Positions 12,989 to 63,610 of a stretch of 64,000 nt of DNA are shown here, piece after piece. This DNA comes from Macrostomum lignano (lineage: Eukaryota). The number at the start of each line of letters is the position of its first letter. Positions within the stretch are counted from its first letter, which is position 1. The position numbers were made by a program, and so were the translations under genes. The notes under the pieces were generated by a model. That model had not been told where the DNA came from, ran no database searches, and saw only the letters and a list, made by a program, of their open reading frames with translations. The stretch is taken from positions 124,001 to 188,000 of the forward strand of contig NIVC01000684.1 in assembly GCA_002269645.1 (NCBI GenBank), written 5' to 3'.

Positions 12989-15246
12989 ATGGCGGGCAAT
13001 ATGCAGGATTATTTTAAGTCCAGATTCGAAGACAATCTGCTTGTGTAAGTAAATTCTTTTTTTTAAACGTGAAAAGTTGTTATTAATAATATATCAAAGT
13101 ACAAACAGCAATTCTCTCCTATTGACAGGAAAATGCCGGAACGGGAGGACGATCATCTGACTTCGGCCACCAGGTTGCTTGAGAAGAAACGCGAAATGAT
13201 GGAAGTAGAAACTGCTCTAAGTGTAAGTGAAAAAACTGTTGAGCTTTTCCAATCTACTACTTCCAGTAGAGATTGTAGGAACTTTTCTGTTTTCATTCCA
13301 AGGGTATCAACATATCCACGACCCTGAATTTTTTTAGGAACCCTCTGTCCCCTCTTTATTCGCGCCACTGTATGCTTTTAGATTCCTTCTAAAGAATTTT
13401 AGTCTACTGATTGTAACTAATTACACTGGGGTCTGAAGGCATCGTAGAATCCTCTCCAGATTCTAGGTCTAGTACTTCACAGCGTCATATATGCCTTTCC
13501 AGATTTCTAGGTCTTAATAATCCCCAGTGTCGTTCATTAGATTCCTCTCCAGATTCTAGGTTTAGTACTCCACAGTGCCATAGACTCCTCTCCAGATTCT
13601 AGGTTTAGTACTCCACAGCGCCATAGACTCCGCTCCAGATTCTAGGTTTAGTACTCCACAGTGCCATAGACTACTGTCCAGATTCTAGATGCAGTACTTC
13701 ATAGTAGAAGATAAATTTTCGCATTCAAAAAACAGCAACCCGAACTTATTTCCTAAATTTAAAAACGCAATCGCCCAGGCCCAAAAAGAAGAATTCCAAA
13801 TGAAGATGGAATCGCTGCAGCAACGCCGGGAAGAGCTTGAAAAGAAGGAGCAGCAACTGAAAGAGAGCCTATTGAAATTTGATCGCTTTCTAAAAGAAAC
13901 GGACGCCAAACGAGTTCGAGCGGTTAAGAAGGCCACGGAGGAGCGATCTTATCGGCGTCAGAAAGAGCAGGAGATTGCACAGGTTCAAGAGGACATGTCG
14001 GTCTACTCTGAACTGCTAGACCGGCTCAACAAGCTGGCTGATAAATACTTGGCTTTTCAGCGCTACCTGGAGAGAGTTGTTGAAGTGTCAGATGAGTTCA
14101 CGGAGATTCGCGAAGTTGTTGACAGATTTGAGACGCTTAGCTCTACATATCAGGTTGGTGGGGAGGATGCTGGTTGATGCAGATAGGGGTTGTTACATGT
14201 AGGATGCTCAAAAGATGATGAGGTAGACAAGGTGTAGATTGGAGTAGACCAGGTAGAATGAGATAGATAATGAGTACGGTGAAGTATGGAAAAATTATGA
14301 TAATGTATAGGCAAAGCGATATGAAGTAGACAAAACAGATTTAGGTTACAGCAATAGGCAACAGAGTAGTTTGAGTGCGAGACAGCGGTGAGGTAGACAG
14401 GGTAACAGGTTGGTGTAGAAGAGGTGTTACATTTGGAATTACTGTAGATAGATGGTTGAAATGAGGTAGCTTTTTTAGTTTAGAATGTAGTAGATAATTG
14501 AGAATGAGGTAGACCATTGAGAATGAAGTAGACAATTAATAATGAGGTAGACAATTGAGAATGAGGTAGACAATTGAGAATGGGGTAGACAGTTCAGAAT
14601 GAGGTAGACAATTGAGAATGAAGTAGACAATTCAAAATGAGGTAGACAGTTGGTAGACTGATACTAAGTTTGGAATGAGGCAGAAAATGTGGGAATTACA
14701 AATCTGTGCTCAAACCCTAAACCGATGAAGGACCTGAAGCGCCGAGAGCAGCTCACCCAGGACAGCATCGAAGTGTGTCGGACCCAACAGCAGGCCTACA
14801 AGGAGGCCAAAGCCAACGAAGTGCTCAGCCAGAACAACGCACTCAGCGGCCTCCAAGAACGCCTGGAAGCCGCCACCAGCGCCGCTATGAAACGCGAAGC
14901 CGAATGGACTTTAATAAAACATTCTGTCGCCGATCGAACGATGCAGATTGGCACAGTTCGGGTTGCATCTTACAATCTGTGCCAGCTGGTTAATAAATAT
15001 CAAGGTGGCTTGCACCAGCGGCACCAGCAGATGCAGGAGCTTGATGATCTGGCAACTAAAGCTACAGGCGGCGATATTGGTCAGGTGACTTCGGATCAGT
15101 TGACTCGGGTGCAGCAGTTCGTGATGGATCTGACTGCCGTCACCGAGCGAGTTGTTGCCAACAAACGGTCGGCCACTTCTGCCGCAGCCACCGCTGCCGC
15201 CACCGCCACCGCAGCAGCGGAGACTGAGCGAACTATGGAGCTGTGA
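12989..15246 (+). CDS. CCDC42: CCDC42/CFAP73-family (DUF4200) coiled-coil cilia/flagella protein, 346 aa; exons 12989-13044, 13129-13222, 13779-14153, 14731-15246
   Basis: Spliced product MAGNMQDYFKSRFEDNLLVKMPEREDDHLTSATRLLEKKREMMEVETALSAQKEEFQMKMESLQQRREELEKKEQQLKESLLKFDRFLKE...SYNLCQLV follows the CCDC42/CFAP73 pattern (YF..., LLEKK, L..FD.F..E, NL...V). Introns are GT-AG with consistent phases. The paralog assignment is uncertain. Confidence 0.88.
13430..13700. repeat. ~44-bp imperfect tandem repeat in CCDC42-like intron 2
   Basis: (GACTCCTCTCCAGATTCTAGGTTTAGTACTCCACAGTGCCATA)-like, about 6 copies. Confidence 0.8.
14450..14655. repeat. ~20-bp imperfect repeat (GAGAATGAGGTAGACAATT) in CCDC42-like intron 3
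   Basis: Visible tandem copies; a related motif also occurs at ~15340-15400. Confidence 0.7.
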
Positions 15247-19059: not shown

Positions 19060-21316
19060 ACCTCAAAACACAGGTAACCCTTAAACACAGGTACCCACTT
19101 CAAGACACAGGTAACCACTTCAAGACACAGGTAACCACTACAAGACACAGGTAACCACTTCAAGACACAGCTGTATCCCTTCAAGACACAGCTGTACCAC
19201 TTCAAGACACAGGTAACCACTTCAAGACACAGGTAACCACTTCAAGACACAGGTAACCACTTCAAGACACAGGTTACCACTTCAAGGCACAGGTAACCAC
19301 TTCAAGACACAGGTGTACCCTTCAAGACACAGGTAACCACTTCAAGACACAGGTAACCCCTTCAAGACACAGGTAACCCCTTCAAGACACAGGTAACCCC
19401 TTCAAGACACAGCTGTACCCCTTCAAGACACAGGTAACCCCTTCAAGATACAGCTGTACCCCTTCAAGACACAGGTAACCACTTCAAGACACAGGTAACC
19501 ACTTCAAGACACAGGTAACCCCTTCAAGACACAGGTAACCCCTTCAAGACACAGCTGTACCCCTTCAAGACACAGGTAACCACTTCAAGACACAGGTGTA
19601 CCCTTCAAGACACAGGTAACCACTTCAAGACACAGGTAACCCCGTCAAGACACAGGTGTACCCCTTCAAGACACAGGTAACCCCTTCAAGACACAGGTAA
19701 CCCCTTCAAGACACAGCTGTACCCCTTCAAGACACAGGTAACAACTTCAAGATACAGCTGTACCCCTTCAAGACACAGGTAATCACTTCAAGACACAGGT
19801 AACCACTTCAAGACACAGGTGTACCCCTTCAAGACACAGCTGTACCCCTTCAAGACACAGCTGTACCCCTTCAAGACACAGTAACCCCTTCAAGACACAG
19901 CTGTACCCCTTCAAGAAACAGGTAACCCCTTCAAGATACAGCTGTACCCCTTCAAGACAGAGGTAACCACTTCAAGACACAGGTAACCACCTCAAGACAC
20001 AGGTAACCCCTTCAAGACACAGCTGTACCCCTTCAAGACACAGTAACCACTTCAAGACACAGGTAACCACTTCAAGACACAGGTAACCACTTCAAGACAC
20101 AGGTTACCACCTCAAGACACAGGTAACCACTTCAAGACACAGGTAACCACTTCAAGACACAGGTAACCCCTTCAAGACACAGCTGTACCCCTTCAAGACA
20201 CAGCTGTACCCCTTCAAGACACAGCTGTACCACTTCAAGACACAGCTGTACCCCTTCAAGACACAGGTAACCACACTTCAAGACACAGCTGTACCCCTTC
20301 AAGACACAGCTGTACCCCTTCAAGACACAGGTAACAACTTCAAGACACAGGTAACCCCTTCAAGACACAGGTAACAACTTCAAGACACAGGTAACCCCTT
20401 CAAGACACAGCTGTACCCCTTCAAGACACAGGTAACCCCTTCAAGACACAGCTGTACCCCTTCAAGACACAGGTAACCCCTTCAAGACACAGCTGTACCC
20501 CTTCAAGACACAGGTAACCCCTTCAAGACACAGCTGTACCCCTTCAAGACACAGCTGTACCCCTTCAAGACACAGGTAACCCCTTCAAGACACAGCTGTA
20601 CCCCTTCAAGACACAGCTGTACCCCTTCAAGACACAGGTAACCCCTTCAAGACACAGCTGTACCCCTTCAAGACACAGGTAACCCCTTCAAGACACAGGT
20701 AACCACTTCAAGACACAGGTAACCCCTTCAAGACACAGCTGTACCCCTTCAAGACACAGCTGTACCCCTTCAAGACACAGCTGTACCACTTCAAGACACA
20801 GCTGTACCCCTTCAAGACACAGGTAACCACACTTCAAGACACAGCTGTACCCCTTCAAGACACAGCTGTACCCCTTCAAGACACAGGTAACAACTTCAAG
20901 ACACAGGTAACCCCTTCAAGACACAGGTAACAACTTCAAGACACAGGTAACCCCTTCAAGACACAGCTGTACCCCTTCAAGACACAGGTAACCCCTTCAA
21001 GACACAGCTGTACCCCTTCAAGACACAGGTAACCCCTTCAAGACACAGGTAACCCCTTCAAGACACAGCTGTACCCCTTCAAGACACAGGTAACCCCTTC
21101 AAGACACAGGTAACCCCTTCAAGACACAGCTGTACCCCTTCAAGACACAGGTAACCCCTTCAAGACACAGCTGTACCCCTTCAAGACACAGGTAACCCCT
21201 TCAAGACACAGCTGTACCCCTTCAAGACACAGGTAACCCCTTTAAGACACAGCTGTACCCCTTCAAGACACAGGTAACCCCTTCAAGACACAGCTGTACC
21301 CCTTCAAGACACAGGT
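19060..21316. repeat. ~20-22 bp minisatellite mixing TTCAAGACACAGGTAACC(A/C)C and TTCAAGACACAGCTGTACCCC units, ~100 copies
   Basis: Directly visible; ends ~60 bp before the ATG at 21377. Confidence 0.95.
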
Positions 21317-21376: not shown

Positions 21377-24300
21377 ATGGCCGAATCCGACGTGAATCTG
21401 AGCAGCGAACGAGTCCTGCTAGAAGCGCACGCCTACACGGAGGCAAAGCGCCGACATCGTCGACTATTTCAACTGCAATTAGAGGCCGGCGGCCTGCAGT
21501 TGGTGAGCTACGACGATCGGCGCCAAATGATTGCGGGCCACTGGCGTCATCGGCTGTGCGTTGAGCAGCTTGTGTGGCTGCAGGTGAGTAACAATAAGCA
21601 TGCACATGAATCAGTTTGTGTACTTTTAGGCCGGTATTCTAGCTATTTGTCAAGGACGACTCCAGTAGGAGAAGGACGGGAAGCTCAGTAGGCAGAAGGT
21701 TTTATCGAAAAAAATCATCAGACCTAAAATTCGTTTTAAGAATCTTTTTTTTATCCATCTTAGCTTATTGCTGTGTAAACAAAATGGATTTTTAAACTAC
21801 CATAGCTCAAGTCTTTTTATAGATATGGCCAATTATTAGCCTATAAAATTAAAGACTTATTTCACTTTAACGAATGCTTACTACTGAATGTAGGAATTAT
21901 AAAACTATTCCCTTTTTTAATAAAGCTATAAGAAAGGAAGCCATATATCAAAAGACGAACATTTGGTCTGTCTTCTATCAAAAGAAAACCTCCTATCTCT
22001 CTAATGTATTTTTTCGGTCAAACATGCCTCCTAAAAATTTTTCCCAAGAAACCTACTCGTAGTTTCTCGTCCTTCTACTTGCTAAAGTCAAAGTCAAATT
22101 GGGGTTGTAGAAAGCACCGATCGAATTAAGCAAAGATGCGTGCGCTGTGAAGTAAGGTAAACAGTTAGTTGACTTTGAATCAAATTGTGTATAAAACGGC
22201 CCTTCTCAGGACGGAAAATGATTTTATTTGATTATTTCTCCTTTTTTTACCCTCTAGGAGCAGCCAAGCAAGCAGCTGCTGGCTTTGACTTTCCAACGCG
22301 ACTGGATCCTGATGCGATTCGGTTCGGCTAGCGACTTCCATCGCTGGTCGGAACGCTTGAAACCGTTGGCTAGGCCGTTGCTGAACAACCTGATCTACTG
22401 TTCCATGGTCAGCATGCGACGCGGCAGCGGCGAGGCCCGTCAGTTGACTGGCAAACGGCTGGTGCTGAGTCTGACCAGCTGCGAGCTGCATCTGGGACGG
22501 GACTGTGTGAGCAGGCCGGAACTCCGTCTGCTGGTTGTCTGCCTGCGGCGATGTCAGAAGGACGACGATTCAGTTAGGATTCAGTTTGGCACCGGGGAGA
22601 TGGACCTGCAGGTGAGAGGGGAGATGGATCTGCAGGTGAGAGGGGAGATGAAAGTGAGATGGGAGATGGACCTGTAGGTGAGATGGGAGATGGATCTGCA
22701 GGTGAGAGGGGAGATGAACCTGCAGGTGAGAGAGGAGATGGATCTGCAGGTGAGAGAGGAGATGGATCTGCAGGTGAGAGAGGAGATGGATCTGCAGGTG
22801 AGAGAGGAGATGGATCTGCAGGTGAGAGAGGAGATGGATCTGCAGGTGAGAGAGGAGATGGATCTGCAGGTGAGAGGAGATGGATCTGCAGGTGAGAGAG
22901 GAGATGGATCTGCAGGTGAGAGGGGAGATGGATCTGCAGGTGAGAGAGGAGATGGATCTGCAGGTGAGAGAGATGGATCTGCAGGTGAGAGTGGAGATGG
23001 ATCTGCAGGTGAGAGAGGAGATGGATCTGCAGGTGAGAGAGGAGATGGATCTGCAGGTGAGAGAGGAGATGGATCTGCAGGTGAGAGAGGAGATGGATCT
23101 GCAGGTGAGAGGGGAGATGGATCTGCAGGTGAGAGAGGAGATGGATCTGCAGGTGAGAGAGGAGATGGATCTGCAGGTGAGAGAGGAGATGGATCTGCAG
23201 GTGAGAGAGGAGATGGATCTGCAGGTGAGAGGGGAGATGGATCTGCAGGTGAGAGAGATGGATCTGCAGGTGAGAGGGGAGATGGATCTGCAGGTGAGAG
23301 GGGAGATGGATCTGCAGGTGAGAGGGGAGATGGATCTGCAGGTGAGAGGGGAGATGGATCTGCAGGTGAGAGGGGAGATGGATCTGCAGGTGAGAGAGAT
23401 GGATCTGCAGGTGAGAGGGGAGATGGATCTGCAGGTGAGAGAGGAGATGGATCTGCAGGTGAGAGAGGAGATGGATCTGCAGGTGAGAGGGGAGATGGAT
23501 CTGCAGGTGAGAGAGATGGATCTGCAGGTGAGAGGGGAGATGGATCTGCAGGTGAGAGGGGAGATGGATCTGCAGGTGAGAGAGATGGATCTGCAGGTGA
23601 GAGAGATGGATCTGCAGGTGAGAGGGGAGATGGATCTGCAGGTGAGAGAGATGGATCTGCAGGTGAGAGGGGAGATGGATCTGCAGGTGAGAGAGATGGA
23701 TCTGCAGGTGAGAGGGGAGATGGATCTGCAGGTGAGAGAGGAGATGGACCTGTAGGTGAGAGGGGAGACGAAGAAACCAAGACAAGTTAAGAAGATAGAT
23801 AGTAGGACTCAATGAAAGAGAGATGAGAAACGATGGGGACTGCAGAGTAAAAGCATTATCAGTTATGTTTTTGAGCTGATCAATTTTTCCAGTCTAGCTT
23901 GGTTTACTGCGCGGAAATTTTCTCGAGTCGCAGGGCAAAAAGGAAGCAGTTGCTTTCTATATACGGAAGCCAACATCAATGCAAGATTTAATTATCTTTG
24001 TATGCCTTATCTGATATACATTATCGACGCGCGTAGCATCTTTAGCTTTAATAGCAACGAAAGACGTTAGGAAGAGGGAAAAATCAGTAAACTGTGTAGC
24101 CGGCCAGCACTAAAAAGGAAATAAAATGCTAATAAATATGTGAATAGAAAATGTACGTTTGGCAGCTGTGAGTGTGTAAGTAGATAAATTTTGCCATATA
24201 ATCATTGTTATTGCTAAAGCTGACACGAAAGGAGGGAAAGATGGGAAGAGAAAGGAGGGTGAGATGGAAAGACAGTAGGCTGAGACCCGATACTATTAGT

Positions 24301-51261: not shown

Positions 51262-51483
51262 ATACCGTAGTTAAAACTTCATCGCGTTGGTCGTTATGGT
51301 AACGTTTATCGCACTGTATCACTGTATGTTTGTTTTTTTAATAGCTATATAGGATCTTTACATGTGGTACTTTTGCTTCTATAGTAAACAACATTGCATC
51401 ATCTTTAATAAGGTTTTTTGCAGCCCATTGAGCCTACGCGCATTGAATTTAATCCAAGATATGTTTTTTTAACGGAATGGAAC

Positions 51484-52572
51484 TTTTGTCTATGGTAGCA
51501 AGGCTGGCACAGCGGGATTTAATTTTTGGTCCAACAAGCATCAATTTGGTCCAACAAGCATCAATTTGGTCCAACAAGCATCAATTTGGTCCAACAAGCA
51601 TCAATTTGGTCCAACAAGCATCAATTTGGTCCAACAAGCATCAATTTGGTCCAACAAGCATCAATTTGGTCCAACAAGCATCAATTTGGTCCAACAAGCA
51701 TCAATTTGGTCCAACAAGCATCAATTTGGTCCAACAAGCATCAATTGGGTCCAACAAGCATCAATTTGGTCCAACAAGCATCAATTTGGTCCAACAAGCA
51801 TCAATTTGGTCCAACAAGCATCAATTTGGTCCAACAAGCATCAATTTGGTCCAACAAGCATCAATTGGGTCCAACAAGCATCAATTTGGTCCAACAAGCA
51901 TCAATTTGGTCCAACAAGCATCAATTGGTCCAACAAGCATCAATTTGGTCCAACAAGCATCAATTTGGTCCAACAAGCATCAATTTGGTCCAACAAGCAT
52001 CAATTTGGTCCAACAAGCATCAATTTGGTCCAACAAGCATCAATTTGGTCCAACAAGCATCAATTTGGTCCAACAAGCATCAATTTGGTCCAAAAGCTCG
52101 TGAGCCATTCGGCAAACTCTTGCCTTCTGGCAACTGTCTGCAGGTTGTTGCGTACTGCTGGCATGTCAGCGTGTCTACCAACAATCTTCAGTCGCTTTTC
52201 CAGAGCTCGATCTGCTCCGAGTCGAAATCTGATAACCAACCGGAACTGTTCCTTCAACTTCTGCTGCATTTTCTGCACCGTCAACAGAGGGTTTCTCAAC
52301 TGCATCGAGTAGCAGTTGGACCTGAGGCTCTTGAGCAACTTGCCTTGGTGATTTCCAGCCTTTCGCAGACAACCTCTGCCGGCAGTGGTTTCAACGCGCT
52401 GATGGATGCTGTAAATCATCTTTTCTACTATATTCAGCAAAATTTTGTTGACCTCTGTCGAGCGCTTCGATCACAAGCCAATGGGTTCGACAGCCTAGCA
52501 TCTATGGACCAAATTGATGTTTGTTGGACCAAATTAAATGCCGCTGTGCCAACCTTGCTACCATAGACAAAA
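51484..52572 (-). mobile_element. Internally deleted Tc1/mariner-like DNA transposon with ~65-bp inverted ends
   Basis: TTTTGTCTATGGTAGCAAGGCTGGCACAGCGG…TTGGTCCAACAAGCATCAATTTGGTCC (from 51484) is inverted at ~52505-52572. The internal minus ORF 52060-52440 (…LRNPLLTVQKMQQKLKEQ…RLKIVGRHADMPAVRNNL…RRQEFAEW) resembles the Tc1 DNA-binding region. No clear TA TSD was found. A third terminal copy lies at ~52740-52810. Confidence 0.6.
51528..52092. repeat. 20-bp minisatellite (GGTCCAACAAGCATCAATTT)n, ~28 copies
   Basis: Directly visible. The unit equals the inner part of the inverted terminal repeat of the enclosing element. Confidence 0.96.
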
Positions 52573-53658
52573 TCTCCGTGCACGTTACATTGGCAAACCT
52601 ATCTTGGATTAGATTAAATGCGCGTAAGCCCAAGTGGGCTGGGCTGCAAACAGCTATACTGTATTATTGCTTCTGCCAGTCTATTTGAGCTTACTTGCAT
52701 TGAAATAAAGCAAAGATATATTTGCCAAAGTACTGGAGCTTTTGTCTATGGCAACAAGGTTGGCACAGCGGTAGATAATTGGGTCCAACGAGCATCAATT
52801 TGGTCCATATAGCGGCTCTATAGCTTCACCCGGCCCTAAGATTTTAATCTAGACCACAGAAATTAGAATAGCTAGATAGGCCAAATGTAGATGGTCAATG
52901 TATTTGAAGACTTGCTTTGTCTGTTTTTATGGTGAAATTTGTAGTTGTCTATGGCCCAAGGCAAATCGCACAACTGTATAGAATTGATTGCGCGCCTAAA
53001 TTCTCAAACTATATATGGTTGTTCCACAGACCCCGCTTGGAACATAGACTCCTGCAGAGCTCGTTGACTTGTAAAATTCTATTCATGTACATTTTGTGCG
53101 AGTCATACATGTAAAAATCTTGTCTATCAGTTCGTTAATGTGATTTCACACTGTTGTTGTGGAAACAAGTACAGTGTTAACAGTACGTTTAAACAAGCAG
53201 TTAATTATTATGTCGTTAAGCAGAATAAAACATGTATTAGCAAAATATTTATGGCAATATATTCATGCACAATTCTCAAATGCTTTTGTTTTACAAATCC
53301 ACTCATGCCATTCAGAATAAAAATATTTTGCTTCATCAACCACATGTTAGCTCAGCTCATGTATTTGTGCTGACATGTACATTGATAAACTCCGGTATGC
53401 TCTTGGATGTCTCTTATCGCTCGACGCTAACTCGCTAAAATTATAGATAGCTAGTCATATTTATAGGATATTACATGTAAAGTATACTTTTTTAATCGAT
53501 ACGTACATTGTCTTCTCAATCTGTCCTCACCCAACTCATCAATTATAGATTGTTTTGTTGATACGGACTAGCTATACTCGTACTGCAAGCTATATACCAT
53601 CGCATACCTAAATTTTTAGGCTTTAACATTTTCATTTGGTTTTGAACGTAAACAAATA

Positions 53659-53946: not shown

Positions 53947-54773
53947 TATAATATATTTATTGGGCAAATAGCTTCGATACTTTTTCTGGAGTTGCTATAT
54001 TTTTTTATTGTTTAAAAAAGCCATCTTTAATTTATTGAAGGAGCTTTTTTAAATAGAAGGACGCTACGCTTGCTAATCGTGTTAAATTTTTGTCGACTGA
54101 CTATACTAACTGCTGGTTCTTTATTTATCGTTTACATGTTTTGTTAAATAACTGCATTAACGAACTTCGTGCAAGTATGAGCACATGCATTAATGAATGC
54201 GCATATGCTGCACGTTCTTGTACACGAAAATTGCATCCAGTTTGCAAGGTAATATTAACTTGGCAATCCATAAACGCTGCTATCAATAAGCTACCTTTAG
54301 AGATCTTAATTATTAATCTTATACAGTTTTCTAGGCAGTCCGTCAATTAGGCTTCTAATCGGTTCGGATCTTCCAAGAAAAAAACTGTTTAACTATTTAA
54401 CTTTGTTGAAGGTCTGGCGGCTGTCTGTCTGTCTTAAGAGTCTCATTTTGCACAAGTTTTCACTTTCTTCTTGGCTTATTTGGACCATTTAATAATTACA
54501 ACCTTTGTAGCACGTTTTTTCACTCAAGTTTAGGAGACAAAAAGTTATATTTTACAATTTAGATCTGGTTCTAGGACCTGAAAAACAAGCAATCAAAAAG
54601 GCTCAGTGTATTTTAATTCATTTTCTTAAAATTTTATTTCTTAGAAACTTATTCAAACCACGAGTGTTTTGAATTGCCGGGCATGTCACGCAGACGCATT
54701 TGTTTCCCCATTGATATTCGCATTGATATTCAAATTTTAACAAAAGCAAAATACTAAAAGCAACCCGTAGCAT

Positions 54774-57444
54774 GAAACTTTACACAGAGTAAACTGCAAC
54801 CGTGAAACGACTATTGGTCAAGTTTCAGCTCGATATGTAACTTTGGCTCTGAGCAGGAGCGATTTTCGATGTGTTCCATTTAAAATACATGTGATTCCAA
54901 AATTCATATTGATATTCGAGTACAGGTACTTCTGCTTCACCGATCTTGACGAAACTTTACACAGAGTAAACTGCAACCGTGAAACGACTATTGGTCAAGT
55001 TTCAGCTCGATATGTAACTTTGGCTCTGAGCAGGAGCGATTTTCGATGTGTTCCATTTAAAATACATGTGATTCCAAAATTCATATTGATATTCGAGTAC
55101 AGGTACTTCTGCTTCACCGATCTTGACGAAACTTTACACAGAGTAAACTGCAACCGTGAAACGACTATTGGTCAAGTTTCAGCTCGATATGTAACTTTGG
55201 CTCTGAGCAGGAGCGATTTTCGATGTGTTCCATTTAAAATACATGTGATTCCAAAATTCATATTGATATTCGAGTACAGGTACTTCTGCTTCACCGAGCC
55301 TGATGAAACTTTACACAGAGTAAACTGCAACCGTGAAACGACTATTGGTCAAGTTTCAGCTCGATATGTAACTTTGGCTCTGAGCAGGAGCGATTTTCGA
55401 TGTGTTCCATTTAAAATACACGTGATTCCTAAATTCATATTGATATTCGAGTACAGGTACTTCTGCTTCACCGATCTTGACGAAACTTTACACAGAGTAA
55501 ACTGCAACCGTGAAACGACTATTGGTCAAGTTTCAGCTCGATATGTAACTTTGGCTCTGAGCAGGAGCGATTTTCGATGTGTTCCATTTAAAATACATGT
55601 GATTCCAAAATTCATATTGATATTCGAGTACAGGTACTTCTGCTTCACCGATCTTGACGAAACTTTACACAAAGTAAACTGCAACCGTGAAACGACTATT
55701 GGTCAAGTTTCAGCTCGATATGTAACTTTGGCTCTGAGCAGGAGCGATTTTCGATGTGTTCCATTTAAAATACACGTGATTCCTAAATTCATATTGATAT
55801 TCGAGTACAGGTACTTCTGCTTCACCGATCTTGACGAAACTTTACACAGAGTAAACTGCAACCGTGAAACGACTATTGGTCAAGTTTCAGCTCGATATGT
55901 AACTTTGGCTCTGAGCAGGAGCGATTTTCGATGTGTTCCATTTAAAATACATGTGATTCCAAAATTCATATTGATATTCGAGTACAGGTACTTCTGCTTC
56001 ACCGATCTTGACGAAACTTTACACAGAGTAAACTGCAACCGTGAAACGACTATTGGTCAAGTTTCAGCTCGATATGTAACTTTGGCTCTGAGCAGGAGCG
56101 ATTTTCGATGTGTTCCATTTAAAATACATGTGATTCCAAAATTCATATTGATATTCGAGTACAGGTACTTCTGCTTCACTGATCTTGACGAAACTTTACA
56201 CAAAGTAAACTGCAACCGTGAAACGACTATTGGTCAAGTTTCAGCTCGATATGTAACTTTGGCTCTGAGCAGGAGCGATTTTCGATGTGTTCCATTTAAA
56301 ATACACGTGATTCCTAAATTCATATTGATATTCGAGTACAGGTACTTCTGCTTCACCGATCTTGACGAAACTTTACACAGAGTAAACTGCAACCGTGAAA
56401 CGACTATTGGTCAAGTTTCAGCTCGATATGTAACTTTGGCTCTGAGCAGGAGCGATTTTCGATGTGTTCCATTTAAAATACATGTGATTCCAAAATTCAT
56501 ATTGATATTCGAGTACAGGTACTTCTGCTTCACCGATCTTGACGAAACTTTACACAGAGTAAACTGCAACCGTGAAACGACTATTGGTCAAGTTTCAGCT
56601 CGATATGTAACTTTGGCTCTGAGCAGGAGCGATTTTCGATGTGTTCCATTTAAAATACATGTGATTCCAAAATTCATATTGATATTCGAGTACAGGTACT
56701 TCTGCTTCACCGATCTTGACGAAACTTTACACAGAGTAAACTGCAACCGTGAAACGACTATTGGTCAAGTTTCAGCTCGATATGTAACTTTGGCTCTGAG
56801 CAGGAGCGATTTTCGATGTGTTCCATTTAAAATACATGTGATTCCAAAATTCATATTGATATTCGAGTACAGGTACTTCTGCTTCACCGATCTTGACGAA
56901 ACTTTACACAAAGTAAACTGCAACCGTGAAACGACTATTGGTCAAGTTTCAGCTCGATATGTAACTTTGGCTCTGAGCAGGAGCGATTTTCGATGTGTTC
57001 CATTTAAAATACATGTGATTCCAAAATTCATATTGATATTCGAGTACAGGTACTTCTGCTTCACTGATCTTGACGAAACTTTACACAAAGTAAACTGCAA
57101 CCGTGAAACGACTATTGGTCAAGTTTCAGCTCGATATGTAACTTTGGCTCTGAGCAGGAGCGATTTTCGATGTGTTCCATTTAAAATACACGTGATTCCT
57201 AAATTCATATTGATATTCGAGTACAGGTACTTCTGCTTCACCGATCTTGACGAAACTTTACACAGAGTAAACTGCAACCGTGAAACGACTATTGGTCAAG
57301 TTTCAGCTCGATATGTAACTTTGGCTCTGAGCAGGAGCGATTTTCGATGTGTTCCATTTAAAATACATGTGATTCCAAAATTCATATTGATATTCGAGTA
57401 CAGGTACTTCTGCTTCACTGATCTTGACGAAACTTTACACAGAG
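54774..57444 (+). repeat. 177-bp tandem array, left arm (15 units)
   Basis: GAAACTTTACAC recurs at 54774, 54951 … 57429 (15 x 177). Confidence 0.96.
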
Positions 57445-59593
57445 CAGGCCAGCGTGCGCCGCGTCGACTTGAGCCTCGAGCGAGTCTATCAGCGTCCAGG
57501 TCTCGGCGTTGTATAACAGGACGGTCTCGATCACCGCCTGGAACAGCGCCGCCCTCTGGCGGTCCGGTAGGGCCTCGGACTGCAGGACTGACCTTATAGA
57601 ACGAAAGGCAGCCCAGGCAAGTCCTCGGCGACGCCGCAGATCCTCGCGGACGTCGGGAACCAGACCGCCGAGGTAGACGAACTGCTGACATCTTGGAAGC
57701 TCACTCGCCTGTCCGTCAGCGCCTCGGCAGAAGATTGCAGCCTCGGTGTCGTCCGGCACGCATAGCACGACGGTCTTCTGCGTGTTGACCACCAGGCCGA
57801 CGCTCGCCGCAACGGCAACCAGCCTATCCAGCTGTCGTTGGGCGCCCTCGAGGGCGAGGTCATCGGCGTAGCCAAGCACGCTGAGCCGTCTCTCCGGTTG
57901 GCGTCGACCCACGCGTCGCCGCAGCAGGAAGCTGTCGTCGTTGGAAGGCAGAGCAGTCCGTAGCACCCAGTCAAGCACCAGAATAAATAGGAACGGCGCT
58001 AGCGTATCTCCCTGGAGCACCCCAGAGGATGTCTCGAAGAAATCCGATAGGCCGTCCGGTGTTGAGACAGCAGCCGTCGTGCCGTGGTACAGCGCCATGA
58101 CAGCAGAAATCAGCAGCTCTGGCACGTTGTACGCACGGAGCACCTCTGGGAGCGCGTCCCTCACGACCGAGTCGAAGGCCTTCCTGAAATCGACGAAGAT
58201 TAGGATCAGGGTCAACTGGCGGATGCGCGCCTCCTCGATGACTCGCCGAAGAGCCAGGATCTGCGTCACTGTGCCGCGATGGGGCCGGAAACCGTTTTGC
58301 TCAGGCCACAGGTACGGGTCCAGCACAGTCTGTAACCGCGATAGCAGCATGCGGTTGAACAGCTTCGCGGCGCAGGACTGTAGGCAGATGCCTCGATGCT
58401 CCTCGAGCTTGGTGGTGCCCGGCTTCTTTGGAATGGCGACGATGTGCGCCGTGGTCCATTCGTTTGGCGCCACCTCACCGGAAAGCACGCGGTTCATCAC
58501 TCTGGCGACCTCAGTGGCCACGCAGTGGATCCGCAGCGCCTCGGTGGGCACCTCGTCCGGACCAAGCGCTTTGCCGCCCGGCGACTGCCGAGCGAACTTC
58601 ACAACGTCGGCTGTGCTGACTGGGGCAACGTTGAAGCTCTCCTTCGCTGCAACGGCGTCTCCGGCGGCAGCCTCAGATTTTCTGGAAGCGGAGGGGGCGC
58701 GTTGACAATGGCGGCGAAGAACTCGCGCAGCTCGTTCCTGCGCTCATCCGGAATGTCGCCTGCCTGGTTGAGCGCGATGCGCCGCTTTCGCCCCGTCAGA
58801 GTGTTGATGACGGACCAGGCCACGCGCCCTCTGGCATCGGGCCCTGCGGCAGAGACGGCTTGGATGGCGTCATCGACAGCGGACTGCTGCCGCTGCAGTT
58901 AGACAGCTGCCAGAGCCTCCTCCGCCTCGCCAGTTTGCCGCCCACTCAGACGGAGCCTCTCCAGATCTTCCCTCGCTTCGTCGATCGCGGGGTCGTCCTG
59001 CCAGACCGGCTGCCCGCGCTGGGCCGGTCGCATCAGCGGGACTGCTTGCTCCGCAGCGGCTCGAACTGCAGCGCTCACCTCCGCGTACTCGGCTCCTCCA
59101 CGCTTGTCGCCCAGCGCAGTGACAAAGGCACCGGCAAAGCGACGCCGCGTCTCGGCGTCCCTGAGCGCGCGGTAGTAGCCCGCGGTGGCCGCTTTGGCGG
59201 ACGGTAGAGCGGGTCCCGAAGCCGAAGGTCGCAGATGAGCAGCCGATGGTCGGACCGCAGAGCCAGTGGCGTAATGGTGCGGCAGTTAGTGACGCGGCGG
59301 CGCTCACGAAAGCGCACAAGCACGTGGTCGAGCTGTGCCAGCCTCCGCGTAGCGTTCCGGCCGCGCGCGTTCCGCCGCCTCCGCTTGCAGCCCACAAGGT
59401 CGCGAGCCTGCCCGGTGACTTGCGGAATCTGGTGTTGGCCGACACCATGTCCTGTCTCTCCAGGATGTCCTCTAGCGCTCCGGTGTTGCCGTTCTCGCGC
59501 GCTGTCACAAACAGCGATCGCTCGGACCTACGCAGAACTGCGTTCAGGTCTCCGAGAATGACCACTGTGTCACGTTGCGCCATCTCCTCCACC
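57445..59593 (-). pseudogene. Non-LTR retrotransposon (RTE-like) APE-RT ORF fragment, truncated at both ends and frameshifted
   Basis: APE motifs VVILGDLNA and LDHVLV…SDH. RT motifs IPKKPG, QNGFRPHRG, FVDFRKAFDSV, GVLQGDTLAP and YADD. It is split over several ORFs, lacks the APE N-terminus, and ends just after AETWTL…VDAAHAGLL with no 3' UTR or tail. Confidence 0.9.
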
Positions 59594-62043
59594 TACTCGA
59601 ATATCAATACGAATTTTGGAATCACATGTATTTTAAATGGAACACATCGAAAATCGCTCCTGCTCAGAGCCAAAGTTACATATCGAGCTGAAACTTGACC
59701 AATAGTCGTTTCACGGTTGCAGTTTACTCTGTGTAAAGTTTCGTCAAGATCGGTGAAGCAGAAGTACCTGTACTCGAATATCAATATGAATTTTGGAATC
59801 ACATGTATTTTAAATGGAACACATCGAAAATCGCTCCTGCTCAGAGCCAAAGTTACGTATCGAGCTGAAACTTGACCAATAGTCGTTTCACGGTTGCAGT
59901 TTACTCTGTGTAAAGTTTCATCAGGCTCGGTGAAGCAGAAGTACCTGTACTCGAATATCAATATGAATTTTGGAATCACATGTATTTTAAATGGAACACA
60001 TCGAAAATCGCTCCTGCTCAGAGCCAAAGTTACATATCGAGCTGAAACTTGACCAATAGTCGTTTCACGGTTGCAGTTTACTCTGTGTAAAGTTTCGTCA
60101 AGATCGGTGAAGCAGAAGTACCTGTACTCGAATATCAATATGAATTTTGGAATCACGTGTATTTTAAATGGAACACATCGAAAATCGCTCCTGCTCAGAG
60201 CCAAAGTTACATATCGAGCTGAAACTTGACCAATAGTCGTTTCACGGTTGCAGTTTACTCTGTGTAAAGTTTCGTCAAGATCGGTGAAGCAGAAGTACCT
60301 GTACTCGAATATCAATATGAATTTTGGAATCACATGTATTTTAAATGGAACACATCGAAAATCGCTCCTGCTCAGAGCCAAAGTTACGTATCGAGCTGAA
60401 ACTTGACCAATAGTCGTTTCACGGTTGCAGTTTACTCTGTGTAAAGTTTCATCAGGCTCGGTGAAGCAGAAGTACCTGTACTCGAATATCAATATGAATT
60501 TTGGAATCACATGTATTTTAAATGGAACACATCGAAAATCGCTCCTGCTCAGAGCCAAAGTTACATATCGAGCTGAAACTTGACCAATAGTCGTTTCACG
60601 ATTGCAGTTTACTCTGTGTAAAGTTTCGTCAAGATCGGTGAAGCAGAAGTACCTGTACTCGAATATCAATATGAATTTTGGAATCACGTGTATTTTAAAT
60701 GGAACACATCGAAAATCGCTCCTGCTCAGAGCCAAAGTTACATATCGAGCTGAAACTTGACCAATAGTCGTTTCACGGTTGCAGTTTACTCTGTGTAAAG
60801 TTTCGTCAAGATCGGTGAAGCAGAAGTACCTGTACTCGAATATCAATATGAATTTAGGAATCCCATGTATTTTAAATGGAACACATCGAAAATCGCTCCT
60901 GCTCAGAGCCAAAGTTACATATCGAGCTGAAACTTGACCAATAGTCGTTTCACGGTTGCAGTTTACTCTGTGTAAAGTTTCATCAGGCTCGGTGAAGCAG
61001 AAGTACCTGTACTCGAATATCAATATGAATTTTGGAATCACATGTATTTTAAATGGAACACATCGAAAATCGCTCCTGCTCAGAGCCAAAGTTACATATC
61101 GAGCTGAAACTTGACCAATAGTCGTTTCACGGTTGCAGTTTACTTTGTGTAAAGTTTCGTCAAGATCGGTGAAGCAGAAGTACCTGTACTCGAATATCAA
61201 TATGAATTTTGGAATCACATGTATTTTAAATGGAACACATCGAAAATCGCTCCTGCTCAGAGCCAAAGTTACATATCGAGCTGAAACTTGACCAATAGTC
61301 GTTTCACGGTTGCAGTTTACTCTGTGTAAAGTTTCGTCAAGATCGGTGAAGCAGAAGTACCTGTACTCGAATATCAATATGAATTTTGGAATCACATGTA
61401 TTTTAAATGGAACACATCGAAAATCGCTCCTGCTCAGAGCCAAAGTTACATATCGAGCTGAAACTTGACCAATAGTCGTTTCACGGTTGCAGTTTACTCT
61501 GTGTAAAGTTTCGTCAAGATCGGTGAAGCAGAAGTACCTGTACTCGAATATCAATATGAATTTAGGAATCACGTGTATTTTAAATGGAACACATCGAAAA
61601 TCGCTCCTGCTCAGAGCCAAAGTTACATATCGAGCTGAAACTTGACCAATAGTCGTTTCACGGTTGCAGTTTACTTTGTGTAAAGTTTCGTCAAGATCGG
61701 TGAAGCAGAAGTACCTGTACTCGAATATCAATATGAATTTTGGAATCACATGTATTTTAAATGGAACACATCGAAAATCGCTCCTGCTCAGAGCCAAAGT
61801 TACATATCGAGCTGAAACTTGACCAATAGTCGTTTCACGGTTGCAGTTTACTTTGTGTAAAGTTTCGTCAAGATCGGTGAAGCAGAAGTACCTGTACTCG
61901 AATATCAATATGAATTTTGGAATCACATGTATTTTAAATGGAACACATCGAAAATCGCTCCTGCTCAGAGCCAAAGTTACATATCGAGCTGAAACTTGAC
62001 CAATAGTCGTTTCACGGTTGCAGTTTACTCTGTGTAAAGTTTC
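59594..62043 (-). repeat. 177-bp tandem array, right arm, inverted (~13.8 units)
   Basis: AAAGTTTC ends at 59742 … 62043 (13 x 177), plus a 148-bp partial unit next to the insert. Confidence 0.96.
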
Positions 62044-63610
62044 ATGCTACGGGTTGCTTTTAGTATTTTGCTTTTGTTAAAATTTGAATATCAATGCGAA
62101 TATCAATGGGGAAACAAATGCGTTCACGCAGTCACTCAGTCGCTGGCCAGCAAGTAAGTCGTAAGTAACAACGTGTAACGCATTATTTCTTACCAGAAAT
62201 CATAACAGTCATTAGTAATTGTTGTATTGTATATGTGATTCCACCATTAACGGTTTTTAAGTTACTTTTTATGAATTCGCAAATATAATACAAAGCTAAT
62301 TAGTAATTACAATAGCAGAATAGCTAAGCTAGGCCCTATCACAGCTATCGAGGCCTACCCGCCGTACCCGGCCAGCCGGCCTAGCTATAATTAATTAATC
62401 TAGGCCTATGATTGCCGCGACTCGCTTAGTCAATATGTTTGCTCTTCAGTCTTCAGTAGGCTAGCCTAATTCAATGATGGAGCCTTTTACTTGCCTACTA
62501 GTACTAAACTATACTAGAACAGGTCCTGGTCCTTTTTTCAACTGCTGTTTTGTCCACTGGGCACTGGGTTGACAAGGAGTGGATAGAATAGAATTACAAA
62601 AGATTTGGTTTTGTGCCAGTAGCTAGAGTGCCCAAATTTACTTTGTTAGGGGTAGGCCCTATGCAAGTTCACAACAAAAGACAAGAGGTCTAACTGCCCC
62701 CTTACTTTTATTTTACTATCTTCCTTAACTTAAGCTTATATGTAGGCCTAGCTTATGGTTACACAAAAGTTATGTCTAGATGCAATGTTTAGCCTATACT
62801 GATAGTGAATTAATATTGTAATGTAAGAAGATAAAAATGAATTAGGGCCTAATCTTATATGGCTATAGTAATTTCACTCCTTTTTTAAGAGAATTGCATT
62901 TTACTATTTATTATGGCTAAAAATTAATTTAAATGATTTGACTGATTTGTGTAAAAATTTGTAAGAAAACCAAATGTGCATTATAAATGCCAAACCAAAT
63001 GCATGCAAAAAATTCTAGCATGAATAATATCTTCAGAGTGTGGTTTTTTCACTTTTATAATGCAATATAATGTTAGGCCTAACAAATGATTTAAGCCAGT
63101 TATTAGGCCTCCCCCCATCATATATCTTATAGGCCTAAATTATAATATAAATAAATTAAGTGACTGAAGTGACTAAAATACATTAAGCTAACTAGGCCTA
63201 GCTAAGTAGATTAAAAATACAAAGGTCAATGTTTAATAATAGGCCCCTACTAGTAGGCCCCTACTTAGAAACAAGTACAAATGTGATATAAGTCATATAA
63301 AGACAAATATTTTCTAATTAGTTTAAGATAGAGCCTATCAATATCATACAACAAAAATGATACAAATTATTAAAGCAGTTATTTTATTTTCCTTATTATA
63401 AAATAAAAAAAATTTCTTGTAAAAATGTCATCAAAGATTGATGTAAAAAATAGAATCAGCTAGGCCTAGCTTATTTTGCTATGCCTATAAAAAGTTATAT
63501 AATATTAGAAGACAACATTGATCATATTCAATGAATCAATGGGATAAATAAATTATGCCACATTCAATGCTGAAGCAAGTTTAGATAAAAAACCATAGAA
63601 CATTTTAAAG

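What the first reader, a model, noticed from the sequence alone, without database searches (positions are those of the whole stretch)
54686..62131. 7.4-kb foldback element: TSD-bounded giant inverted repeat made of 177-bp satellite arms
Seen: an exact 8-bp direct repeat TCACGCAG flanks identical 80-bp inverted termini beginning ACGCATTTG. The arms are 15 and ~13.8 tandem 177-bp units pointing inward. The motif ATTGATATTC occurs twice in each terminus and once in every unit. Known: Drosophila FB and Galileo elements have long, internally repetitive TIRs. An 8-bp TSD is typical of hAT/P/Merlin, but these termini lack the usual CA/TA start. Inference: the whole unit moved as one DNA transposon of a possibly undescribed family that spreads a satellite, with ATTGATATTC as a candidate transposase-binding site.
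Basis: partly seen in the sequence, partly recalled or inferred. Interest (0 to 1): 0.85.

Follow-up and report, generated by a model that had tools for sequence, protein, structure and literature searches.

The report
Flatworm foldback transposon with satellite arms
A 7.4-kb insertion in a macrostomid flatworm genome is a transposase-less foldback-type DNA transposon: its two inverted arms are arrays of a 177-bp repeat and its centre is a dead LINE fragment, a neat example of an element type already known from flies, nematodes and plants.

Summary
An exact 8-bp direct repeat (TCACGCAG) flanks identical 80-bp inverted termini. Inside them lie 15.1 and 13.8 copies of a 177-bp unit in mirror orientation. 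ATTGATATTC occurs twice per terminus and once per unit, and nowhere else in the window.

It is cut at both ends and frameshifted. The element therefore has no transposase and is non-autonomous.

The arms share one pool of unit variants but carry them in a different order, and each arm has private duplications. They are therefore not a mirror copy or a foldback assembly artefact.

The best reading is one insertion of a foldback-type cut-and-paste transposon, mobilised in trans, with the repeated motif as a plausible transposase-binding site. The architecture closely matches Tetris of Drosophila virilis and Galileo.

The host is a relative of Macrostomum lignano. No second copy, empty site or transposase could be found with the collections available, so family, superfamily and mobility remain untested. 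I rate it a new member of a known kind, of moderate-to-low interest.

The parts
54686..54693 (.). Left copy of the 8-bp target-site duplication, TCACGCAG
   Evidence: one of only two copies in the window, directly abutting the left terminus.
54694..54773 (+). Left 80-bp terminal (flanking) domain, starting ACGCATTTG. It holds a 12-bp tandem duplication, CATTGATATTCG/CATTGATATTCA, at element positions 16-39.
   Evidence: 80/80 identical to the reverse complement of 62044-62123; motif copies at 54710 and 54722.
54774..57444 (+). Left arm: 15 full 177-bp units plus 16 bp
   Evidence: period 177, 15.1 copies, 98% matches. (unit-by-unit variants).
57445..59593 (-). Middle domain: an internal fragment of a non-LTR (LINE) retrotransposon. 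It holds the C-terminal part of the endonuclease, the linker and most of the RT. It is truncated at both ends and frameshifted near 58645-58650, with no 3' tail.
   Evidence: RVT_1, E 7.8e-25. RT homologues, best named ones from Macrostomum lignano; 86.5% nt identity to L121, with homology ending at 57443; tblastn frames -1 and -2; homologues continue about 95-110 residues further.
59594..62043 (-). Right arm: 13 full 177-bp units plus 149 bp, inverted relative to the left arm
62044..62123 (-). Right 80-bp terminal domain
62124..62131 (.). Right copy of the 8-bp target-site duplication, TCACGCAG, followed by the near-repeat TCACTCAG

Best explanation
Window 54694-62123 (7430 bp) is a single insertion of a non-autonomous, foldback-type class II (cut-and-paste) transposon in the genome of a macrostomid flatworm.

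**Anatomy (shown).**
- Each end has an 80-bp unique terminal domain followed by an inward-pointing array of a 177-bp unit.
- The loop is a 2.15-kb dead LINE fragment.
- No transposase is encoded.

**Mechanism (inferred).**
- A transposase supplied in trans binds the termini, probably through the subterminal ATTGATATTC(G) motif. That motif is duplicated in each terminus and repeated once per 177-bp unit.
- The transposase excises the whole unit and integrates it at staggered cuts 8 bp apart. Repair of those cuts produced the TCACGCAG duplication.

**History (inferred).**
- The arm arrays grow and shrink independently by unequal exchange or slippage, which explains 15.1 versus 13.8 units and the 3-unit periodicity in the right arm.
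- The LINE piece was most likely acquired as filler DNA during abortive gap repair or an internal deletion. The alternative is a LINE that once sat in the loop and was later trimmed. It did not arrive by retrotransposition into its present form, because it lacks its 3' end.

The superfamily cannot be assigned from this copy.
For: **Transposon structure.**
- Exact 8-bp direct repeats sit immediately outside perfectly matching 80-bp inverted termini.
- Arms of 2751 and 2530 bp make up 71% of the element and consist of a 177-bp tandem repeat.

**The arms are real, independent arrays.**
- They share unit variants (14A; 117C+126T; 171G/173C/177T) in a different order.
- Each arm has private variants present in two or more units: 168T in three left units; 63C in two right units and 117C alone in two right units.
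- Mean differences between arms (2.4 per 177 bp) equal those within arms (2.0 and 2.8).

**Motif.**
- It occurs 33 times against 0.05 expected, all co-oriented with the terminus of the arm.
- The terminus and the unit share only the 11-mer ATTGATATTCG (E 0.005).

**Centre is a truncated LINE.**
- RVT_1 domain.
- 617 RT homologues.
- Nucleotide homology to L121 stops at 57443, with a 2-nt overlap with the satellite. The homologue's ORF continues beyond that point.
- A frameshift separates the linker from the RT.

**Published precedents for the architecture.**
- Tetris has a flanking domain, about 220-bp TIR tandem repeats, a non-coding middle domain and 8-9-bp TSDs. Its repeat shares a 37-bp stretch with the flanking domain (PMC4079207).
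- Copies of the Galileo F subfamily carry different numbers of TIR tandem repeats in their two arms (PMC3573991).
Against: - Only one copy is visible. No second copy, solo terminus or empty site exists in the 64-kb window, and none was found in any collection searched. Mobility therefore rests on one TSD.
- The target is itself a near-tandem octamer (TCACGCAG TCACTCAG). The last bases of the TSD (ACGCAG) also resemble the first bases of the TIR (ACGCAT). A repair-generated or pre-existing repeat is therefore not strictly excluded.
- No transposase is known for it.
- The terminus ACGCA fits none of the 8-bp-TSD superfamilies I could check.
- The binding-site role of the motif is inference only.
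Confidence: 0.8

Rival explanations
1. The structure is a local inverted duplication (palindrome) of a pre-existing 177-bp satellite array around a LINE fragment. It would have been made by replication template switching or fold-back repair, not by transposition. On this view the 8-bp repeat is chance or a microhomology by-product.
For: - There is a single copy in the window and no transposase.
- Junction microhomology is seen at the inner left junction (2 nt).
- The target flank is a near-repeat octamer.
Against: - An inverted duplication has only one novel outer breakpoint. It does not predict that arm homology stops at exactly matching positions flanked by an exact 8-bp direct repeat.
- The arms are not mirror copies.
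- The unique 80-bp terminal domain with its own motif duplication looks like a transposon end.
Confidence: 0.07
2. The structure is an assembly artefact, such as a chimeric foldback long read or a mis-joined or inverted satellite array.
For: Long inverted satellite arrays are hard to assemble. No reads were available here to check this one.
Against: - Foldback-read artefacts give a perfectly symmetric palindrome around a point. This structure instead has a unique 2.15-kb asymmetric centre.
- The arms differ in length and in inner phase: position 16 of the unit on the left, position 149 on the right.
- There are 37 mismatches between the arms in register, and the order of unit variants differs.
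- The outer ends are precise and bounded by a TSD in unique flanking DNA.
Confidence: 0.03
3. The element is a composite or macro-transposon. Two separate satellite-bearing elements flanking a resident LINE copy were mobilised together, as with Drosophila FB-flanked segments. It would not be a single foldback element that captured filler DNA.
For: The centre is foreign DNA (LINE) bounded on both sides by element sequence. Pairs of FB elements are known to move intervening DNA (my own knowledge of Drosophila FB-mediated 'TE' transpositions).
Against: - In a pair of complete elements, the terminal domains would abut the captured segment.
- Here the LINE abuts truncated 177-bp units, at unit positions 16 and 149.
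- Only two terminal domains exist, and both face outward.
Confidence: 0.05

Closest known systems
Tetris (foldback transposon of Drosophila virilis; PMC4079207)
   Same: - Long TIRs are built from an outer unique flanking domain followed by tandem repeats of roughly nucleosome length: about 220 bp in Tetris, 177 bp here.
- The tandem repeat shares a short stretch with the flanking domain.
- The middle domain is variable and non-coding.
- TSDs are 8-9 bp.
- No autonomous copy is known.
   Different: - The hosts belong to different phyla, and no sequence relationship was tested.
- The flanking domain here is only 80 bp, against up to 866 bp in Tetris.
- The arms here are far longer (14-15 units).
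- The middle domain here is an identifiable LINE fragment.
- It is unknown whether the 177-bp unit also forms free satellite arrays.
Galileo (P superfamily, Drosophila; PMC3573991, PMC4168063)
   Same: - The TIRs are long and internally repetitive.
- The two arms of one copy can hold different numbers of tandem repeats.
- The tandem repeats are reported to carry secondary transposase (THAP) binding sites.
- Many copies consist of TIRs only and are non-autonomous.
   Different: - Galileo makes 7-bp TSDs; this element has 8 bp.
- Galileo has known transposase-bearing copies, and none is known here.
- The number of repeats per arm is much higher here.
Drosophila FB and Tm1 of Meloidogyne (Mutator/Phantom-related foldback elements; PMC3169594)
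   Same: - The TIRs are composite: short terminal motifs followed by variable numbers of tandem repeats.
- The families consist mostly of non-autonomous members.
- TSDs of 8-10 bp occur.
   Different: - The modal TSD is 9 bp.
- The repeat units are short: 13-15 bp in Tm1, and 10-31 bp in FB (the FB figure is from my own knowledge).
- A Phantom/MULE transposase is known for those families, and none is linked here.

Membership tests
Foldback-type DNA transposons (a structural class, not a clade) | Very long terminal inverted repeats that make up most of the element | tested here: met
   The arms are 2751 and 2530 bp of a 7430-bp element and are 98-99% complementary.
Foldback-type DNA transposons (a structural class, not a clade) | TIRs composed internally of tandem repeats, whose number differs between arms or copies | tested here: met
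   15.1 versus 13.8 copies of a 177-bp unit.
Foldback-type DNA transposons (a structural class, not a clade) | Target-site duplication flanking the whole unit | tested here: met
   An exact 8-bp TCACGCAG lies on both sides. Caveat: the target is a near-tandem octamer.
Foldback-type DNA transposons (a structural class, not a clade) | Repeated family: several copies at different sites, each with its own TSD | not testable with these tools
   One copy in the window. The source genome is not in any searchable collection.
hAT superfamily | 8-bp TSD | tested here: met
hAT superfamily | Short TIRs starting with 5'-YARNG, and a hAT transposase (from my own knowledge of the family) | tested here: not met
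   The terminus is ACGCA. No transposase ORF is present in the element.
Merlin superfamily | 8-9-bp TSD with a conserved terminal 5'-GG-3' (PMC8101967) | tested here: not met
   The TSD length fits, but the terminus starts with AC.
P superfamily (P, Galileo, 1360) | 7-8-bp TSD and a THAP-domain transposase; Galileo specifically has 7 bp | tested here: inconclusive
   The 8-bp TSD fits P but not Galileo (PMC3573991). There is no transposase in this copy.
Mutator/Phantom-related foldback elements (FB, Tm1) | TSD of 8-10 bp, usually 9, and a MULE/FLYWCH transposase in autonomous copies (PMC3169594) | tested here: inconclusive
   8 bp is at the edge of the range. No transposase is available.
Non-LTR retrotransposon (applies to the middle domain only) | Reverse-transcriptase domain with an upstream endonuclease and linker, collinear with LINE ORF2 homologues | tested here: met
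   RVT_1, E 7.8e-25. tblastn collinearity with P0001, P0003, P0005 and P0011 over 57418-59177. The endonuclease remnant was read from the ORFs at 59075-59592 and was not detected by Pfam.
Non-LTR retrotransposon (applies to the middle domain only) | An intact 3' end or tail with its own TSD, as expected for an insertion by target-primed reverse transcription | tested here: not met
   Homology stops inside the RT ORF at 57443, whereas the homologues continue about 95-110 residues. It is therefore a captured or trimmed fragment, not a fresh LINE insertion.

The most novel reading that the evidence does not exclude
This could be the first-seen member of a flatworm foldback family with two properties. 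It would be mobilised by a transposase lineage with 8-bp TSDs and non-canonical ACGCA termini that fit none of hAT, P or Merlin. Its 177-bp arm repeat would also be a free genomic satellite. That would make it a live case outside Drosophila of a transposon seeding satellite DNA, with ATTGATATTC(G) as the multiplied transposase-binding site.
Probability: 0.15. Interest if true: 0.55.

Novelty: new member of a known kind. Interest (0 to 1): 0.3.

Why it matters
Foldback elements are drivers of inversions and ectopic recombination, and in Drosophila virilis (Tetris) they are a documented source of new satellite DNA. A clean copy bounded by a TSD, with 14-15 nucleosome-sized repeats per arm, shows that the same architecture arises in Platyhelminthes, in a macrostomid flatworm. 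Nothing in the literature I could search describes that.

It also gives a concrete handle for asking three questions about these very repeat-rich genomes:
- whether dispersed 177-bp arrays travel on transposons;
- which transposase moves them;
- whether the 5-kb inverted repeat is a source of hairpin small RNAs or of structural instability.

In itself it is an ordinary, non-autonomous transposon copy.

Tried and rejected
**Searches for other copies (all negative).**
- Metagenome scan with ATTGATATTCNNATTGATATTC. The pattern was too unspecific. BLAST of the terminus plus two units against all 120 loci returned gave only the motif pair itself, for example a 12-bp microsatellite in L028.
- Exact look-up of the 52-aa satellite ORF.
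- Protein search with the 59-aa-per-unit open frame.
- Viral contigs scanned with a unit core.
- Bacterial and archaeal genomes scanned with the terminus.
- Full-text search for four sequence strings.

**Coding potential of the arms.** One frame is open through every unit, giving 918-aa and 793-aa ORFs. However, 9% of shuffled units have an open circular frame, the Pfam hits are far below cut-off, and no homologues exist. I rejected this as chance.

**Other checks.**
- No paralogous empty site or other copy exists in the window.
- There are no Rfam families or tRNAs in or near the element.
- Shifting the boundaries to obtain a 7-bp or 9-bp TSD, or a CA/TA start, fails on the sequence.
- LINE twin priming or transduction was considered as the origin of the inverted structure. 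I rejected it because the LINE lacks its 3' end, and because the arms end in identical non-LINE termini.
Full report
**1.
- TCACGCAG occurs exactly twice in the 64-kb window, at 54686-54693 and 62124-62131. Each copy directly abuts a terminus.
- The termini 54694-54773 and 62044-62123 are 80/80 reverse complements and begin ACGCATTTG.
- Tandem Repeats Finder reports a 177-bp period at 54774-57444 (15.1 copies) and at 59594-62043 (13.8 copies), each with 98% matches. The two arrays are inverted relative to each other, with a longest arm pairing of 2530 nt at 99%.
- ATTGATATTC occurs 33 times against 0.05 expected, all inside the element. It occurs twice per terminus (a 12-bp tandem duplication, CATTGATATTCG/CATTGATATTCA) and once per unit, always co-oriented with the terminus of its arm.
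- The TSD is exactly 8 bp. Neither 7-bp nor 9-bp readings match.
- One caveat: the right flank continues TCACTCAG, so the target was a near-tandem octamer.

Region 57445-59593 is 2149 bp, about 63% GC in its core against about 39% in the arms. It is a piece of a non-LTR retrotransposon on the minus strand.
- A 395-aa ORF carries RVT_1 (E 7.8e-25). It has 617 homologues. The best is 84% identical, and the best named ones are Macrostomum lignano reverse transcriptases at 63-86%.
- tblastn with four longer homologues shows collinear linker and RT regions in two frames, which places a frameshift near 58645-58650.
- ORFs at 59075-59592 carry the C-terminal endonuclease motifs.
- The nucleotide alignment to a homologous contig (L121, 86.5% identity) stops at 57443, two bases into the satellite (CT microhomology). 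The homologue's ORF continues for about 95-110 more residues.
- The fragment therefore lacks both its 5' and 3' ends and has no tail. It did not retrotranspose into this position in its present form.
- There is no transposase anywhere in the element, so this copy is non-autonomous.

**3. The arms are real, independently evolving arrays.**
- Aligned from their outer ends, they differ at 37 of 2530 positions.
- The same unit variants occur in both arms but in a different order: 14A; 117C+126T; 171G/173C/177T.
- Each arm has private variants found in several units: 168T in three left units; 63C in two right units and 117C alone in two right units. Right-arm units 6-14 show a 3-unit periodicity.
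- Mean differences per 177 bp are 2.0 and 2.8 within arms and 2.4 between arms.
- The inner ends stop at different unit phases, positions 16 and 149.
- This pattern is incompatible with a mirror-image foldback-read artefact or a very recent inverted duplication. It is what unequal exchange within each arm predicts.

**4. Other properties.**
- One reading frame is open through every unit (177 = 3 x 59). This happens in 9% of shuffles. The translation has no homologues and no significant Pfam match. I treat it as chance.
- The terminus and the unit share only the 11-mer ATTGATATTCG (E 0.005).
- There are no Rfam families and no tRNAs.
- No other copy of the unit, the terminus or the joined flanks exists in the window.

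**5. Host.** An exon at 13689-14177 encodes a CFAP73/CCDC42 (DUF4200) protein that is 76% identical to that of Macrostomum lignano, well ahead of all other animals. Together with the LINE hits, this points to a macrostomid flatworm that is not M. lignano itself.

**6. Mechanism.**
- The best-supported reading is a single insertion of a foldback-type cut-and-paste transposon mobilised in trans.
- The TSD and the perfect termini are shown. The transposase, the 8-bp staggered cut and the binding role of ATTGATATTC(G) are inferred.
- The inference is by analogy with Galileo, whose TIR tandem repeats hold secondary transposase-binding sites. Its arms also differ in repeat number (PMC3573991; Marzo et al. 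2013 as cited in PMC4079207).
- The LINE fragment is most simply filler DNA picked up during abortive gap repair or internal deletion. The 2-nt junction microhomology is compatible with this but not significant.

**7. Rivals.**
- A repair-generated palindrome does not predict matching outer boundaries plus a direct 8-bp repeat.
- An assembly artefact is contradicted by the asymmetric centre and by arms that are not mirror copies.
- A two-element composite is contradicted by the absence of inner termini.

**8. Comparison with known elements.**
- The architecture matches Tetris of D. virilis almost point for point (PMC4079207). Tetris has a flanking domain, about 220-bp tandem repeats in the TIR, a non-coding variable middle domain, 8-9-bp TSDs and a repeat that shares a stretch with the flanking domain.
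- It also resembles Galileo (7-bp TSD) and the FB and Tm1 elements (9-bp TSD, Phantom/MULE transposase, PMC3169594).
- Superfamily assignment fails. The terminus lacks Merlin's 5'-GG (PMC8101967). It also lacks the hAT YARNG start and the P-type CA start (my own knowledge). 8 bp is at the edge of the MULE range.
- The literature held here has no report of foldback elements in flatworms, and none of the sequence strings I searched appears in it.

**9. Limits.** The source genome is not in any collection I could search by DNA. Searches by protein, by exact ORF and by DNA pattern were negative. Copy number, TSD spectrum, autonomous partner, empty site and Dfam/Repbase status therefore remain open.

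**10. Verdict.** This is a genuine, well-preserved, non-autonomous foldback transposon copy. It is a new member of a known kind, possibly the first noted in Platyhelminthes. Interest 0.3.

Noticed in passing
window 51420-52815: A second, unrelated TIR element lies 2 kb upstream. Its left TIR (about 51420-51525) is followed by 28.8 copies of a 20-bp unit, TTTGGTCCAACAAGCATCAA (51525-52097), then about 400 bp of unique sequence. Its right TIR (52505-52640) carries only about 1.5 inverted copies of the 20-mer. A third, partial left-type end lies at about 52680-52815. I saw no clear TSD. It shows the same theme of a subterminal repeat expanding inside one TIR.
   Followed up: partly
window 24825-50634: A 26-kb array of a 34-bp unit, CAGAAGCTACCTGAGATTTACCTGTTACACAGTG, with 760 copies and 99% matches. 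It takes up 40% of the window.
   Followed up: no
window 3235-23768: At least eight further minisatellite arrays have units of 10, 60, 22, 43, 19, 21, 20/41 and 24 bp. Some run to 1-2 kb, for example 19063-21316 and 22594-23768, and several have strong strand skews. The region is unusually rich in minisatellites.
   Followed up: no
window 13689-14177 and 14689-15246: Two long ORFs look like exons of a CFAP73/CCDC42-type (DUF4200) cilia gene. The first is 76% identical to Macrostomum lignano, which identifies the host as a related macrostomid flatworm. Minisatellites lie just upstream (13445-13688) and between the two ORFs (14482-14652).
   Followed up: partly
window 62124-62139: The insertion target is a near-tandem octamer (TCACGCAG TCACTCAG). 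The TSD end ACGCAG also resembles the element's first bases, ACGCAT. This may hint at a target preference, or it may be coincidence.
   Followed up: no
L121 (JGI metagenome 3300043259, contig Ga0484857_0083259): An environmental metagenome contig carries the same LINE family at 86.5% nucleotide identity and 84% protein identity. Relatives of this flatworm, or of its LINE, are therefore present in public metagenomes.
   Followed up: partly
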